DNA of 63,410 nucleotides, filler included, from Octopus bimaculoides (Eukaryota): the NCBI RefSeq assembly GCF_001194135.2. It is 5 parts of 5 records of this genome, joined end to end, with 100 filler letters (N's around TTAATTAATTAA, not from the genome) between each part and the next. Parts side by side here need not be neighbours in the genome. Positions count along the whole stretch, not along the records: positions 1 to 15,805 come from NC_069004.1; 4 more parts are not named here. One strand, given 5' to 3'. Both the position numbers and the translations under genes were made by a program. Below the pieces are notes generated by a model. The model was not told the DNA's origin and did no database searches. It saw nothing but the letters and a program-made list of their open reading frames with translations. Shown here in pieces: positions 6,736-15,805 of the stretch; positions within the stretch are counted from its first letter, which is position 1; every line of letters begins with the position of its first letter.

Positions 6736-9700
6736 GTACGTGCGTTCGGTTGTCATTTCGTGTGTTGGTTCGTTCGCTCGTTAGTTTGTTCATTCGTTCG
6801 CTCTTTTGTCCGTAGGTACCTACGTACGTACGTTAATTCATTCGTACGTACCTACGTACATATGCGCTTACGTACGTACGTGCGTTTGATCGTTCTTTCG
6901 TTCTTTCATTCGTTCGATTGTTCATTCTTTCGTTCTTTCATTCGTTCGATTGTTCATTCTTTCGTTCGATTGTTCATTCATTCTTTCGTTCGTTTGTTCG
7001 AACGTACGTTCGTTCGCTCGTTTGTTCCTTCGTTCGTTGGTTTATTCTTCCGTTCGTTCGGTCGATCGTTCGTTCGGTCGATCGTTCGTTCGGCCGATCG
7101 TTCGTTCATTTGTTTGTTTCGTTCGACCGTACGTACGTTCGTTCTTTTGTTCGTTGGTTTGTTCTTTTGTTCGTTTTTTCGATCGTTCGTTCGTTCTTTC
7201 CTTTGTTCTTTCGATCGTTCGTTAGTTCGTACGTACGTACATTCATTCATTCGTTTGTTCGTATGTTCGTTCGTACGTACTTTAGTTAGTTCATACGTTC
7301 GTTCGTTCATTCATTCATACGTATATACATATGTAAATACGTACGTTCGATCGTTCGTACGTTGGTTCTTTCGTTCGTTCATTTCGTTGGTAACCTCGTT
7401 CGTATGTACGTACGTACGAATGAGCGAACGAACTAAAGAACGAACAAACGAACGAACGTACGTATAATCGTACTTACATATGTATGTATGTATGAATGAA
7501 CGAACGAACGAACGAGCGTGCGTATGTTCGTACGTACATATGTATGAATGAACGAACGAACGAACGTACGTACGTACGAATGTACGAACGAACGAATAAA
7601 GGAACGTAATTACGAACGAACGAACGTACGTATGTTCCTACGTACATATATATGAACGAACGAACGTATGTCAGAACGAATGAACGGATGGACGGACGGA
7701 CGAACGAATGAAATGAACGAACGACCTAATGGACGAACGTACGTACGAATGAACGAATGAACTAACGAACGAACGTAAGTACGTATGTAAGAACGAACGA
7801 ACGATCGAACAAACGAACGAACGGTCAAACAAACGAACGAACAAAGGAAAGAACTGACGAACAAACGAACNNNNNNNNNNNNNNNNNNNNNNNNNNNNNN
7901 NNNNNNNNNNNNNNNNNNNNNNNNNNNNNNNNNNNNNNNNNNNNNNNNNNNNNNNNNNNNNNNNNNNNNNGAACGAAGTAACGAATGAACGTACGTACTA
8001 ACGTACGTAAGAACGAACGATCGATAGAGCGAACGAACGAGCGAACTAATGAACGAACGTACGTACGTATGTACGTAAGTACGAACGAACGAAGGTACGC
8101 AAGTACGTATGTAAGTAAGAAAGAACGATCGAACGAACGAAATAAAGAACGTAAGAACGAACGAACGTAATTACGTACGTAGGTACGTATATATGTACCT
8201 ACGTACGAACGAACGTAAATACGTCTGTTCGTACGTAACAACGAAGGAACGAGCAAACAAATGAGCGAACGAACTAACGAACGAATGTACGAACGTAGGT
8301 ACGTAGGAACGAACAAACGAACGAACGTACGTAGGAACGAACGAACGATTGAACGAACGAACGAACAAACGAAAGAACGAAATAAATTACGTACGTACGA
8401 ACGAACGAGCGAGCGAAAGATTGAAAGAACGAATGTACATACGAAAAAAAAACGAACGAACAAAGAAATGAACGCACGTATGTTCGAACTAACAAATGAA
8501 CGAAAGAACGATCGAACGAACGAACGTAGGTATGTATGTACGTCCGAACGAGCGTACGTACGTAGGTACATATGTACGTACGAACGAACGAACAAAGTAA
8601 CGAACGTACGCGCGTACGTACAGACGTACGTACGTACGTTCTGTCATTCTTATGCACTTACGTTCGTTCGTTCTTTCTTTCGTTCATTCGGTCGTATTTA
8701 GTAACGTACGTACGTTCGTTCGTTGGATCGTTCGTACATACTCACTTATGAACGTACGTACGTTAATTCATTCGTACGTACTACGTACCTACNNNNNNNN
8801 NNNNNNNNNNNNNNNNNNNNNNNNNNNNNNNNNNNNNNNNNNNNNNNNNNNNNNNNNNNNNNNNNNNNNNNNNNNNNNNNNNNNNNNNNNNNNNNNNNNN
8901 NNNNNNNNNNNNNNNNNNNNNNNNNNNNNNNNNNNNNNNNNNNNNNNNNNNNNNNNNNNNNNNNNNNNNNNNNNNNNNNNNNNNNNNNNNNNNNNNNNNN
9001 NNNNNNNNNNNNNNNNNNNNNNNNNNNNNNNNNNNNNNNNNNNNNNNNNNNNNNNNNNNNNNNNNNNNNNNNNNNNNNNNNNNNNNNNNNNNNNNNNNNN
9101 NNNNNNNNNNNNNNNNNNNNNNNNNNNNNNNNNNNNNNNNNNNNNNNNNNNNNNNNNNNNNNNNNNNNNNNNNNNNNNNNNNNNNNNNNNNNNNNNNNNN
9201 NNNNNNNNNNNNNNNNNNNNNNNNNNNNNNNNNNNNNNNNNNNNNNNNNNNNNNNNNNNNNNNNNNNNNNNNNNNNNNNNNNNNNNNNNNNNNNNNNNNN
9301 NNNNNNNNNNNNNNNNNNNNNNNNNNNNNNNNNNNNCGATCGTTCGTTCGATCGTTCGTTAGTTCGTACGTACGTTCGTTAGTTCGTACGTTCGTTCGTT
9401 CATTCATTCATACGTATATACATATGTAAATACGTACGTTCTATCGTTCGTTAGTAGGTTCTTTCGTTCGTTCATTTCGTTGGTAAGCTTGTACATACGT
9501 ACGAATGAGCGACCGAACGATATGAACGAACTAACGAACGAACAAACGAAAGAACGAACGAACGTATGTATATTCGTAATTACATATGTATGAATGAACG
9601 AAGGAACGAACGAGCGTGCGTATGTTCGTACGTACATATGTCTGAATGAACGAACGAACAAACGTACGTACGTACGTACGAACAAACGAATGCACGTCCG

Positions 9701-12700
9701 TACGAACGAACGTACGTACGTTCGAACGAAGGTACGTACGTACGAACGAACGTACGTCCAAACGAACGATCGTACGTATGAAAAAATGATCGAAGGAAGG
9801 AAAGAACGTGCGTACGTAAGTAAGTTCGTACGTACGAATGAATAAACGAAAGAAGGAACGTAACTACGAACGAATGAAAGAACGAATGTATATTTGAATG
9901 AACGAACGAACGTACGTACGTACGTACGAAGGTATGCCAGAACGAACGAACGTAATGACGGACGAACGAACGAACGAATGAAACGAACGAACCAACGACC
10001 TAATAAACGAACGTACCTACGTACGTACGAAAGAACGAAAGAAATAACGAACGAGGTAACAAACGAACGTCCGTACGTATGTACGGATTTACGTACATAA
10101 GTACGTATGTAAGAACGAACGAACAAAGAAACGGACGAACGTACGTACGAACAAACGAACGAACGATTGAACGAACGAACGTACGTACGTACGTACGAAG
10201 GTATGCCAGAACGAACGAACGTAATGACGGACGAACGAACGAANNNNNNNNNNNNNNNNNNNNNNNNNNNNNNNNNNNNNNNNNNNNNNNNNNNNNNNNN
10301 NNNNNNNNNNNNNNNNNNNNNNNNNNNNNNNNNNNNNNNNNNNNNNNNNNNNNNNNNNNNNNNNNNNNNNNNNNNNNNNNNNNNNNNNNNNNNNNNNNNN
10401 NNNNNNNNNNNNNNNNNNNNNNNNNNNNNNNNNNNNNNNNNNNNNNNNNNNNNNNNNNNNNNNNNNNNNNNNNNNNNNNNNNNNNNNNNNNNNNNNNNNN
10501 NNNNNNNNNNNNNNNNNNNNNNNNNNNNNNNNNNNNNNNNNNNNNNNNNNNNNNNNNNNNNNNNNNNNNNNNNNNNNNNNNNNNNNNNNNNNNNNNNNNN
10601 NNNNNNNNNNNNNNNNNNNNNNNNNNNNNNNNNNNNNNNNNNNNNNNNNNNNNNNNNNNNNNNNNNNNNNNNNNNNNNNNNNNNNNNNNNNNNNNNNNNN
10701 NNNNNNNNNNNNNNNNNNNNNNNNNNNNNNNNNNNNNNNNNNNNNNNNNNNNNNNNNNNNNNNNNNNNNNNNNNNNNNNNNNNNNNNNNNNNNNNNNNNN
10801 NNNNNNNNNNNNNNNNNNNNNNNNNNNNNNNNNNNNNNNNNNNNNNNNNNNNNNNNNNNNNNNNNNNNNNNNNNNNNNNNNNNNNNNNNNNNNNNNNNNN
10901 NNNNNNNNNNNNNNNNNNNNNNNNNNNNNNNNNNNNNNNNNNNNNNNNNNNNNNNNNNNNNNNNNNNNNNNNNNNNNNNNNNNNNNNNNNNNNNNNNNNN
11001 NNNNNNNNNNNNNNNNNNNNNNNNNNNNNNNNNNNNNNNNNNNNNNNNNNNNNNNNNNNNNNNNNNNNNNNNNNNNNNNNNNNNNNNNNNNNNNNNNNNN
11101 NNNNNNNNNNNNNNNNNNNNNNNNNNNNNNNNNNNNNNNNNNNGAATGAAAGAACGAATGTATATTTGAATGAACGAACGAACGTACGTCCGTATGTACG
11201 AACGAACGAAATTAAGGAACGAACGAACAAACGAACGAAAGAACGATTGAACGTATGTACGTACATACGTAAGAATGAACGTACGAACGAGCGTACGTAC
11301 GTACGAATGAATGAACATACGTACGTACGAACGATCGAACGAATGATCGTACGTACGTACGGAAGAACGAAACAAACAAACGAATGAACGAACGAGACAA
11401 CGATCGAGCAAACGAAAGAACGTACGTACGTATGTACGAACAAACGAAGGAACGAATGAACAAACAAACGTACGTCCGTAGGAACGAACGCATGTGCGAA
11501 CGAATTAAAGATCGAACGAAAAAACAAACAAACGAACGAACGAACGAACGTACGTACATAATCCGTACGTAGGATCGATCGAATGAGCGAACGAACGTAC
11601 GTACATGCGATCGAAAGAACTAACGTACGTCCGTACGTATGAACGAACGAAATTAAGAAACGAACGAACAAACGAACGAAAGAACGATTGAACTATGTAC
11701 GTACATACGTAAGAATGAACGTACGAACGAGCGTACGTACGTACGAATGAATGAACATACGTACGTACGAACGATCGAACGAACGAACGAAGGAAAGAAC
11801 GAAGTAACGAATGAACGTACGTAAGAACGAACGAACGATAGAGCGAACGAACGAACGAACTAATGAACGATGGTACGTACGTATGTACGTAAGTACGAAC
11901 GAACGAAGGTACGTACGTAAGTACGAACGAATGATCGAACGAACGAAAGATAGAACATAAGAACGAACGAACGTAATTACGTACTTACGAACGAATGTAC
12001 GTATATAAGTACCTACGTACGAACGTATGTCAGAACGAACGAACGTACGGACGGACGAAAGAATGTCCGTACNNNNNNNNNNNNNNNNNNNNNNNNNNNN
12101 NNNNNNNNNNNNNNNNNNNNNNNNNNNNNNNNNNNNNNNNNNNNNNNNNNNNNNNNNNNNNNNNNNNNNNNNNNNNNNNNNNNNNNNNNNNNNNNNNNNN
12201 NNNNNNNNNNNNNNNNNNNNNNNNNNNNNNNNNNNNNNNNNNNNNNNNNNNNNNNNNNNNNNNNNNNNNNNNNNNNNNNNNNNNNNNNNNNNNNNNNNNN
12301 NNNNNNNNNNNNNNNNNNNNNNNNNNNNNNNNNNNNNNNNNNNNNNNNNNNNNNNNNNNNNNNNNNNNNNNNNNNNNNNNNNNNNNNNNNNNNNNNNNNN
12401 NNNNNNNNNNNNNNNNNNNNNNNNNNNNNNNNNNNNNNNNNNNNNNNNNNNNNNNNNNNNNNNNNNNNNNNNNNNNNNNNNNNNNNNNNNNNNNNNNNNN
12501 NNNNNNNNNNNNNNNNNNNNNNNNNNNNNNNNNNNNNNNNNNNNNNNNNNNNNNNNNNNNNNNNNNNNNNNNNNNNNNNNNNNNNNNNNNNNNNNNNNNN
12601 NNNNNNNNNNNNNNNNNNNNNNNNNNNNNNNNNNNNNNNNNNNNNNNNNNNNNNNNNNNNNNNNNNNNNNNNNNNNNNNNNNNNNNNNNNNNNNNNNNNN

Positions 12701-15700: not shown

Positions 15701-15805
15701 GAACGAACATATATTTGAATGAACGAACGAACGTACGTACGTACGTACGAACGTATGCCAGAACGAACGAACGTACGGACGGACGAACGAACGAACGAAT
15801 GAAAC
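6736..15805. repeat. Complex CpG-rich tetranucleotide satellite of GAAC/GTAC/GATC/GTTC units with higher-order structure and polarity switches
   Basis: Direct reading. Includes about 2.4 kb of N gaps (7871-7970, 8793-9336, 10244-11143, 12073-12952, 15080-15089) and runs into a further gap at 15806. Confidence 0.95.

What the first reader, a model, noticed from the sequence alone, without database searches (positions are those of the whole stretch)
6736..15805. About 9 kb G[A/T][A/T]C satellite with a CpG roughly every 4 nt and nested higher-order units
Seen: the array uses a four-word alphabet (GAAC, GTAC, GATC, GTTC) closed under reverse complementation, in otherwise AT-rich DNA. Rare marker strings recur: TTAATTCATTCGTACGTA at 6833, 8763 and 14984; TCATTCTTATGCACTTA at 8644 and 14865; CATACGTATATACATATGTAAATAC at 7316, 9409 and 15302; GAAATTAAG at 11208, 11649, 12981 and 13238. 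These define three large units plus internal sub-repeats, so it is not plain slippage. Inference: a structured, segmentally amplified CpG satellite that could be a chromatin or methylation element. I do not recognise it as a described family.
Basis: partly seen in the sequence, partly recalled or inferred. Interest (0 to 1): 0.75.

Follow-up and report, generated by a model that had tools for sequence, protein, structure and literature searches.

The report
Degenerate octopus GAAC/GTAC repeat array
This is a non-coding, much-mutated four-base repeat (AACG mixed with ACGT) in an octopus genome; blocks of it have been copied and flipped, so it is an unusually large example of an ordinary kind of simple repeat, with no sign of a specific function.

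Summary
Positions 6736-15805 carry a period-4 array: 6,636 read bases in six contigs and 2,434 N. It has 876 G[AT][AT]C words (132/kb against 10.5/kb in the flank). CpG observed/expected is 3.4 against 0.42, and 97% of CpG-to-CpG distances are multiples of 4.

It is a degenerate compound (AACG)n/(ACGT)n microsatellite. Pure runs reach six units at most and unit identity is about 70%. It was later reshaped by irregular segmental duplications and by an inverted (GTTC-type) block of about 0.55-0.67 kb present in three copies. 82% of read bases lie in duplicates of 60 bp or more, against 0-8% in word-shuffled controls. There is no regular higher-order period.

Its long ORFs are by-products of a motif that lacks stop codons. 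No RNA family, tRNA or Pfam match was found.

The host is an octopus, probably the gap-rich O. bimaculoides assembly. Contigs break inside repeated modules. The 10-N gap is an unmerged 47-bp overlap. Continuity across the other four gaps cannot be shown.

Young copies show only weak excess change at CpG, so nothing supports a methylation role. Verdict: ordinary kind, large example, low-to-moderate interest.

The parts
6686..6732 (.). (TA)23 microsatellite forming the left border of the array
   Evidence: TRF period 2, 23.5 copies; sequence read
6736..7405 (.). Unit 1, GTTC/GTAC-type (inverted-orientation) block. Carries markers TTAATTCATTCGTACGTA (6833) and CATACGTATATACATATGTAAATAC (7316).
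   Evidence: GTTC counts by 100-bp window. Markers. 85-88% identical to units 2 and 3. Lies in the same contig as the unique flank.
7296..7514 (.). Imperfect palindrome at the GTTC-to-GAAC switch of unit 1 (arms 7296-7383 and 7427-7514, 43-nt spacer)
   Evidence: 81% complementary, against 70-74% for other arm pairs. Arm-to-arm score z = 4.6 against other GAAC windows. Single-strand DNA fold of 7230-7600 is -113 kcal/mol, z = -10.7.
7410..7870 (.). GAAC/GTAC-type block after unit 1 ('A-head 1'); ends at the 100-N gap
7971..8640 (.). GAAC/GTAC-type block leading into unit 2 ('A-tail')
   Evidence: 8011-8285 ~ 14140-14414 (89.6%); 8311-8792 ~ 14536-15013 (96.9%)
8640..9485 (.). Unit 2 GTTC-type block, split by the 544-N gap (8793-9336). 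Markers at 8644, 8763 and 9409. Palindromic switch near 9487.
   Evidence: switch score z = 3.3
9490..10243 (.). GAAC-type 'A-head 2', with a 269-bp tandem copy (9899-9974 = 10168-10243, 100%). The contig ends inside that repeat.
11144..12072 (.). GAAC-type middle contig. Module X (marker GAAATTAAG at 11208 and 11649) is repeated at a 441-bp offset. Other modules are shared with 13850-14340 and 8000-8178.
12953..14850 (.). Longest GAAC-type stretch. Module X occurs again at 12953 and 13210 (96 bp, 100% identical). Other modules are shared with 8173-8358 and 11380-12025. Holds the spurious 534-aa ORF on the minus strand.
   Evidence: no Pfam family above cut-off
14855..15385 (.). Unit 3 GTTC-type block. 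Markers at 14865, 14984 and 15302. Contains the 10-N gap flanked by the redundant 47-mer (15033-15079 = 15090-15136).
15390..15805 (.). GAAC-type 'A-head 3', cut off by the edge of the piece
   Evidence: 9594-9984 ~ 15415-15805, 93.9%

Best explanation
This is a non-coding, degenerate compound tetranucleotide array in an octopus genome, not a regular satellite and not a gene.

Inferred history:
1. An (AACG)n microsatellite and its one-step derivative (ACGT)n grew by replication slippage.
2. Point mutation then broke the tract. 39% of in-phase CpG junctions are lost, and pure runs now reach six units at most, so slippage is largely extinguished.
3. Larger events then copied blocks of 0.1-2 kb irregularly. 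These would be unequal exchange or template switching between misaligned look-alike tracts.
4. One such event made an inverted duplication through a self-complementary (ACGT)n tract. This gave a GTTC-type block of about 0.55-0.67 kb with a palindromic junction. That block and its flanks were later copied, giving three units.

The high CpG density is a by-product of the motif. It persists because this DNA is not strongly methylated in the germline.

The inverted arms and the alternating purine/pyrimidine (ACGT) tracts make the locus prone to hairpins and further rearrangement. That also explains why a short-read assembler broke it into six contigs.

Shown directly: the anatomy, the excess of duplication over chance, the palindromic junction, the absence of coding or RNA signals, and the octopus origin. 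Inferred: the order of events, the mechanisms, the low methylation and the neutrality.
For: - Period 4 with about 70% unit identity, and no other period.
- The word spectrum is dominated by GAAC and GTAC, or by their complement GTTC in four blocks.
- Longest pure runs are (GAAC)6, (GTTC)6 and (GTAC)4. The longest perfect GWWC run is 44 bp.
- 959 of 1,579 in-phase junctions are still CpG.
- Duplicates cover 82% of read bases, against 0-8% in word shuffles.
- Duplicate offsets are irregular: 257, 269, 441, about 1,930-2,140 and about 5,800-6,200 bp.
- Modules with three or four near-identical copies cannot be just two haplotypes. Examples: 11180/11621/12953/13210 and 9925/10194/15746.
- The junction palindrome scores 81% complementarity, z = 4.6 in unit 1 and 3.3 in unit 2, with a fold of -113 kcal/mol.
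- No Rfam family, tRNA or Pfam domain was found. Homologue hits to the ORF are only low-complexity FVRS repeats.
- Short compound GAAC/GTAC microsatellites exist in unrelated eukaryote-like metagenome contigs.
- Paralogue mismatch is 5.7% at CpG columns against 3.7% elsewhere, and 18 of 43 CpG-column changes are transitions.
- The window's SINEs are up to 98.8% identical to O. bimaculoides CM046612.1.
Against: - Order, copy number and spacing of the contigs therefore rest on a gapped short-read scaffold.
- CpG junctions are lost about 2.7 times as often as the inner dinucleotide departs from the main words, and 55% of single-step losses are TG/CA. Some past methylation-driven decay is therefore possible.
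- PMC9476566 reports relatively higher methylation on satellites than on transposons.
- Genome-wide abundance of this array type is unknown, so a satellite family with a chromosomal role is not excluded.
- The palindrome signal is weak in unit 3 (z = 0.7).
Confidence: 0.7

Rival explanations
1. Assembly redundancy. Units 2 and 3, and perhaps other modules, are one genomic segment represented twice. They would be alternative haplotypes, or repeat contigs placed twice by the scaffolder, so the 'three large units' overstate the real structure.
For: - Units 2 and 3 are 94-99.5% identical.
- Almost every contig end lies in a repeated module.
- The 10-N gap is an unmerged 47-bp overlap, which shows the scaffolder left redundancy.
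- The same artefact occurs at 10-N gaps in the O. bimaculoides locus L001.
- Gap lengths are only estimates.
Against: - Divergence between units 2 and 3 is very uneven (0.5%, 3%, 6%, 10%), with 72-bp and about 96-bp indels. That looks like mosaic paralogues rather than alleles.
- Unit 1 is 85-88% diverged and sits in the same contig as the unique flank, so at least two distinct copies exist.
- Several modules have three or four near-identical copies, more than two haplotypes can give.
- De Bruijn assemblers usually collapse repeats rather than multiply them (general knowledge).
Confidence: 0.25
2. A functional CpG-dense element. The array would be a target of DNA methylation or a platform for a CpG- or motif-binding chromatin protein, for example a heterochromatin nucleation site or boundary.
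For: - CpG o/e is 3.4 in a CpG-poor flank at 0.42.
- There are 310 ACGT and 194 CGTACG sites.
- Satellites are the one repeat class with relatively raised methylation in O. bimaculoides (PMC9476566).
- CpG junctions are the most mutated positions of the unit.
Against: - CpG density follows automatically from the AACG/ACGT motif.
- GC is 42%, below the usual CpG-island criterion.
- No promoter-associated gene, RNA family or conserved sequence partner was found.
- Young paralogues show only about 1.5-fold excess change at CpG columns, and no transition bias there.
- No evidence of other loci, and no methylation or chromatin data could be consulted here.
Confidence: 0.1
3. The array is the internal tandem-repeat region of, or was seeded by, a transposable element, and was spread or amplified with it.
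For: The flank is packed with mobile elements: SINE copies at 1-280, 838-985, 1987-2219 and 5750-5983, and a mariner remnant at about 2830-3720. Satellite birth from TE-internal repeats is well documented in general (PMC7004042 title/abstract).
Against: - There are no terminal repeats, target-site duplication or element ORF bounding the array.
- Its left border is a (TA)n tract.
- The array ORFs match no Pfam family.
- The 24-mer motif was not found with any TE context in L001.
Confidence: 0.05
4. The long open reading frames (up to 534 aa, minus strand) encode a repetitive V-R-S-F-rich protein.
For: There are ORFs of 534, 256, 235 and 210 aa. Weak phmmer hits reach annotated 'hypothetical proteins'.
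Against: - (GTTC)n and (GTAC)n contain no stop codon in any frame on that strand, so long ORFs are expected.
- Overlapping ORFs are open in several frames and on both strands at once.
- The hits are low-complexity only, at 19-52% identity.
- No Pfam family passes its cut-off, and no gene with this product is on record.
Confidence: 0.01

Closest known systems
Compound/interrupted microsatellites and 'cryptically simple' sequence (Tautz, Trick and Dover 1986; from my own knowledge)
   Same: A short motif (period 4). Two motifs one mutation apart are interspersed. Point mutation has broken it into short pure runs. It is non-coding. Short versions, (GTAC)6(GTTC)8 and the like, were found in unrelated contigs.
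   Different: Scale: at least 6.6 kb of read sequence against the usual tens to hundreds of bp. It also carries overlying 0.1-2 kb segmental duplications and orientation flips, which slippage alone does not produce.
Bkm-type (GATA)n/(GACA)n tetranucleotide satellite of snakes and other animals (from my own knowledge)
   Same: A kb-scale array built from two tetranucleotide words that differ by one base, irregularly interspersed.
   Different: Different motif. Bkm has no CpG. Bkm is dispersed and enriched on sex chromosomes, whereas no chromosomal distribution is known here. The motif test is not met.
Human satellites II/III, derived from (CATTC)n (from my own knowledge)
   Same: A simple-sequence ancestor, strong degeneration of the monomer, CpG-bearing variants, and larger irregular duplicated blocks layered on the short period. 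Such regions are hard to assemble.
   Different: HSat2/3 form megabase pericentromeric arrays with defined subfamilies and known methylation behaviour. Here there is one locus of at least 9 kb in TE-rich DNA, and abundance, location and methylation are all unknown.
Higher-order-repeat satellites (e.g. alpha satellite)
   Same: Copies of multi-unit blocks are more alike than neighbouring basic units.
   Different: There is no regular multimer period. Duplicate offsets are irregular and the copies are mosaic.
CpG islands
   Same: Very high CpG o/e (3.4) over more than 200 bp.
   Different: GC is 42%. There is strict 4-nt periodicity, no HpaII site and no associated promoter or gene. The CpG content is a motif by-product.

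Membership tests
Microsatellite / simple sequence repeat (compound, interrupted) | Tandem repetition of a 1-6 nt unit | tested here: met
   TRF period 4 in all six contigs at 70-76% matches. Identity at lag 4 is 0.68-0.72, against 0.22-0.28 at lags that are not multiples of 4.
Microsatellite / simple sequence repeat (compound, interrupted) | Two or more motifs adjoining or interspersed, with interruptions | tested here: met
   GAAC 254, GTAC 194, GTTC 65 and GATC 28 between CpGs. 39% of in-phase junctions are mutated. Pure runs reach six units at most.
Microsatellite / simple sequence repeat (compound, interrupted) | Typical size of tens to a few hundred bp, explained by slippage alone | tested here: not met
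   At least 6.6 kb of read sequence. 82% of it lies in duplicates of 60 bp or more, against 0-8% in shuffles. There are also orientation flips.
Satellite DNA with higher-order repeat structure | Regular multimeric period above the basic unit | tested here: not met
   No lag other than multiples of 4 stands out up to 1 kb. Duplicate offsets are irregular.
Satellite DNA with higher-order repeat structure | Long homogeneous arrays at many or defined chromosomal sites, with high genomic abundance | not testable with these tools
The only sample, 62 kb of O. bimaculoides (L001), has no run of four or more GWWC words.
CpG island | Length over 200 bp, GC over 50% and CpG o/e over 0.6 (Gardiner-Garden and Frommer criteria, from my own knowledge) | tested here: not met
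   CpG o/e of 3.38 and the length are met, but GC is 0.42.
CpG island | Unmethylated state and association with a promoter | not testable with these tools
   No methylation or expression data could be reached. No gene was found next to the array.
Bkm (GATA/GACA) satellite | GATA and GACA tetranucleotide words | tested here: not met
   The words are GAAC, GTAC and GTTC.
Transposable-element-borne tandem repeat | Array bounded by element termini or ORFs, and the same array at dispersed copies | tested here: inconclusive
   The left border is (TA)n, and no TE domain occurs in the array ORFs. The right border lies outside the piece. Dispersed copies could not be searched.
Protein-coding repeat gene | A single conserved reading frame with homologues or domains | tested here: not met
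   Overlapping ORFs run in several frames and on both strands. Hits are low-complexity only. No Pfam family passes its cut-off.

The most novel reading that the evidence does not exclude
The array is one member of an octopod-specific family of CpG-dense tetranucleotide satellites. That family would account for the raised 'satellite' methylation reported in O. bimaculoides. Its members would grow by fold-back (palindromic) amplification at self-complementary (ACGT)n tracts. This would be a distinct, methylated heterochromatin component in a genome whose transposons are otherwise unmethylated.
Probability: 0.08. Interest if true: 0.55.

Novelty: new member of a known kind. Interest (0 to 1): 0.22.

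Why it matters
There are three practical points.
- Arrays like this break short-read assemblies, leaving gaps, unmerged overlaps and uncertain copy number.
- They yield long spurious ORFs that can be annotated as proteins. FVRS-type 'hypothetical proteins' already sit in public databases.
- The array packs about 1,000 CpGs into 6.6 kb, so a few such loci could distort repeat-class methylation summaries in octopus.

Biologically, it is a clear worked example of a dead microsatellite turning into a block-duplicated, partly palindromic array. That is the first step usually proposed for satellite birth. If long reads and methylomes showed many such arrays that were methylated, it would become a more interesting lineage-specific chromatin component.

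Tried and rejected
Copy number, gap continuity, transcription and small RNAs remain untested.
- Exact look-ups of the 534-aa array ORF and of a SINE ORF: nothing on record.
- Homologue search with the array ORF: only low-complexity FVRS hits, in a sea anemone, a cuttlefish and ENA contigs. I rejected these as evidence of a protein.
- Exon-like ORF at about 4230-4375 in the flank: no homologue and no Pfam family. The host gene was not identified.
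- Rfam and tRNA scans: nothing.
- Motif 24-mer: absent from prokaryote genomes and viral contigs. Metagenome hits are short ordinary microsatellites, not relatives of this array.
- Longer periods proposed by TRF (20, 28, 32, 36, 52 and 60 bp, at 62-69% matches): rejected, because they match no better than period 4 and show no autocorrelation peak.
- Literature searches for AACG/ACGT repeats or satellites in cephalopods: no description found. The Octopus minor supplementary tables held as text do not list the motif. The 2015 O. bimaculoides genome paper is not held.
- Z-DNA or cruciform role: 83 alternating purine/pyrimidine tracts of 12 nt or more (maximum 21), against 8 in the flank. I noted this but did not develop it, because the tracts are short and rich in A-T steps.

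Full report
**1. What is in the sequence**

The piece runs from 1 to 15805. Positions 1-6685 are ordinary AT-rich animal DNA, with GC 0.38 and CpG observed/expected 0.42.

A (TA)23 tract at 6686-6732 is followed, from 6736 to the edge of the piece, by a period-4 array. The array consists of six read stretches:
- 6736-7870
- 7971-8792
- 9337-10243
- 11144-12072
- 12953-15079
- 15090-15805

Together these hold 6,636 bases. They are separated by 2,434 N.

Measured properties of the array:
- It holds 994 CpG, with o/e 3.38. That is one CpG per 6.7 nt rather than one per 4.
- 61% of successive CpG distances are exactly 4, and 97% are multiples of 4.
- The words between neighbouring CpGs are GAAC (254), GTAC (194), GTTC (65) and GATC (28), followed by many one-step variants.
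- G[AT][AT]C occurs 132 times per kb. The flank has 10.5 per kb, and composition-matched shuffles give 98 +/- 10 in total against 876 observed.
- These words cover 53% of the read bases.

**2. Anatomy**

The array is strand-polarised in blocks:
- GTTC-type blocks: 6736-7405, 8640-8792, 9337-9485 and 14855-15385.
- GAAC-type: everywhere else.

In any one block the alphabet is really two words: GAAC or GTTC, plus the palindromic GTAC. GATC is a minor variant. The 'closure under reverse complement' comes from these orientation flips plus the palindromic form of the pattern.

Pure microsatellite runs are short. The maxima are (GAAC)6, (GTTC)6 and (GTAC)4, and the longest perfect G[AT][AT]C run is 44 bp. 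This is a heavily interrupted tract.

Autocorrelation shows only period 4. Identity is 0.68-0.72 at lag 4 and decays with distance, with no higher-order peak up to 1 kb. The 20- to 60-bp periods that TRF lists match less well than period 4 itself.

**3. Duplications**

Self-comparison shows a mosaic of copies.

A unit made of [GAAC-type tail | GTTC-type block | switch | GAAC-type head] is present three times:
- Unit 1: 6822-7578.
- Unit 2: 8011-9984.
- Unit 3: 14140-15805.
- Units 2 and 3 are 89.6%, 96.9%, 99.5% and 93.9% identical in successive segments. They differ by indels of about 96 and 72 bp.
- Unit 1 is 85-88% identical to both.

Inside the GAAC-type region, smaller modules recur:
- A module of about 170 bp carrying GAAATTAAG occurs at 11180, 11621, 12953 and 13210, at 95-100% identity.
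- A 269-bp tandem occurs at 9899-9974 = 10168-10243, and starts again at 11144.
- Other modules are shared between 11380-12025, 13850-14340 and 8000-8358.

As a control, I shuffled the CpG-bounded words within each contig, which keeps the word composition. Results:

| Measure | Real array | 30 shuffles |
|---|---|---|
| Longest exact repeat | 196 bp | 27-38 bp |
| Best BLAST score | 835 bits | 60-94 bits |
| Bases in duplicates of 60 bp or more | 5,459 of 6,636 | 0-541 |

**4. The switch is a palindrome**

At the GTTC-to-GAAC switch, the two arms are complementary beyond the motif level.
- Arms 7296-7383 and 7427-7514 are 81% complementary, against 70-74% for other arm pairs.
- They share the AT-rich marker TTACATATGTAT in mirror position.
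- Against 101 other GAAC-type windows, the adjacent-arm alignment score gives z = 4.6 in unit 1, 3.3 in unit 2 and 0.7 in unit 3. Unit 3 has lost 72 bp of the arm.
- As a single strand, 7230-7600 folds at -113 kcal/mol, with z = -10.7 against shuffles.

I infer that the GTTC-type block arose as an inverted duplication through a self-complementary (ACGT)n tract. It was then copied together with its flanks.

**5. Gaps, tested first**

Gap 15080-15089 is flanked by an identical 47-mer (15033-15079 = 15090-15136). The contig ends overlap, the sequence is continuous, and 57 positions are redundant.

The other four gaps show no overlap. Eight contig ends have copies with four or fewer mismatches per 50 bases elsewhere in the array. 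Contigs therefore stop where repeats begin. Continuity, true length and 4-nt phase across those gaps cannot be established.

By paralogy, the 544-N gap corresponds to about 165 bp in unit 3 and about 350 bp in unit 1.

An O. bimaculoides locus fetched for comparison (L001) has the same gap style, including 10-N gaps flanked by unmerged overlaps of 58 and 32 bp.

**6. Real or mis-assembled?**

The internal evidence still says amplification is real:
- Modules with three or four near-identical copies exceed what two haplotypes can give.
- Unit 1 is contiguous with the unique flank and clearly diverged from the other units.
- Divergence between units 2 and 3 is mosaic, from 0.5% to 10%.

Redundant placement of units 2 and 3 remains possible. 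I give it about 0.25.

**7. Not coding, not RNA, not a mobile element**

- ORFs of up to 534 aa occur in several frames and on both strands at once. GTTC and GTAC repeats have no stop codon in those frames.
- The 534-aa ORF finds only low-complexity FVRS-type hits, at 19-52% identity. These come from a sea anemone, a cuttlefish and ENA contigs.
- No Pfam family passes its cut-off.
- No Rfam family or tRNA is found.

**8. Host and surroundings**

- A SINE-derived ORF hits an Octopus bimaculoides protein.
- The window's dispersed repeats are up to 98.8% identical to O. bimaculoides chromosome CM046612.1.
- The flank holds SINE copies and a stop-riddled mariner remnant with HTH_48 and Transposase_1 matches.
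- No host gene could be identified.
- The 62 kb of read sequence in L001 contain no run of four or more G[AT][AT]C words. This is a very small sample.

**9. CpG behaviour**

- 959 of 1,579 in-phase junctions are still CpG.
- Of 536 single-step losses, 55% are TG or CA.
- The junction is hit about 2.7 times as often as the inner dinucleotide departs from the main words.
- Among ten paralogue pairs, eight of them at least 93% identical, mismatches are 5.7% at CpG columns against 3.7% elsewhere. Only 18 of the 43 CpG-column changes are transitions.

This is a weak excess, not the roughly tenfold CpG hypermutability of methylated vertebrate DNA (my own knowledge).

[quoted passage not shown] Transposons are low, and satellites are relatively higher (PMC9476566).

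I conclude that the CpG richness is a motif by-product tolerated in weakly methylated DNA. A methylation role is unsupported but not excluded.

**10. Elsewhere**

- The 24-mer GAACGAACGAACGTACGTACGTAC occurs in 14 metagenome contigs.
- There it lies in short (0.1-0.6 kb) ordinary compound microsatellites such as (GTAC)6(GTTC)8.
- It occurs in no prokaryote genome and no viral contig.

The motif class is generic. The size, block duplication and inversions here are what is unusual.

I found no paper describing such an array in cephalopods.

**11. Verdict**

This is a large, degenerate compound (AACG)n/(ACGT)n array, remodelled by irregular segmental and inverted duplication. It is probably neutral and prone to instability.
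- Kind: a new member of a known kind (compound or cryptically simple repeats on the way to satellite-like organisation).
- It is not a regular higher-order-repeat satellite, a CpG island, a gene or a recognisable mobile element.
- Interest is low to moderate. It would rise if genome-wide scans and methylomes showed a methylated family of such arrays.

Noticed in passing
window 15033-15079 and 15090-15136: An identical 47-mer lies on both sides of the 10-N gap, so this is an unmerged contig overlap and 57 positions are redundant. The same artefact occurs at 10-N gaps in the O. bimaculoides locus L001 (overlaps of 58 and 32 bp at L001 40785 and 63088).
   Followed up: yes
window 2830-3720 (minus strand): Degraded mariner-type transposase with several stop codons and frameshifts. 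It matches Pfam HTH_48 (E = 5.5e-12) and Transposase_1 (E = 2.3e-7).
   Followed up: partly
window 1-280, 838-985, 1987-2219 (inverted), 5750-5983: Copies of octopus dispersed repeats (tRNA-like SINEs). They are 80-99% identical to many copies in O. bimaculoides CM046612.1. One of their ORFs hits 'uncharacterized protein LOC106868243', so at least part of that annotated protein matches SINE-derived sequence.
   Followed up: partly
window 4230-4375 (+): Exon-like open frame (…GKHVWLQEGDDVKVLMPSSTKDGHLTVQFQGVTQDVPHHIVQLR) that ends at a GTAAGT donor-like site. No homologue and no Pfam family were found, so it may be chance or an unannotated exon.
   Followed up: partly
window 1231-1324 and 6137-6154: Other simple repeats in the flank: a compound (ATCT)n/(TC)n tract and a (CAT)6 run. 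The region is generally rich in microsatellites.
   Followed up: no
P0002 (Actinostola sp. hypothetical protein QZH41_006452), residues about 215-400: An annotated sea-anemone protein has a long FVRS/FVPS low-complexity insert between normal-looking regions. This looks like a GTTC-type repeat, possibly intronic, read as coding, and shows how such arrays contaminate protein databases.
   Followed up: no
window 10243, 12072, 15805 (contig ends): Three contigs end within about 20-30 bp after the same module (GTATGyCAGAACGAACGAACGTA…GACGGACGAA). This suggests a branch point in the assembly graph where several copies diverge.
   Followed up: partly
window 6736-15805: Strand asymmetry of CpG decay in GAAC orientation: C>T 185 against G>A 111, and C>A 128 against G>T 41. 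It is unexplained and may reflect copying of a few variants rather than mutation bias.
   Followed up: no
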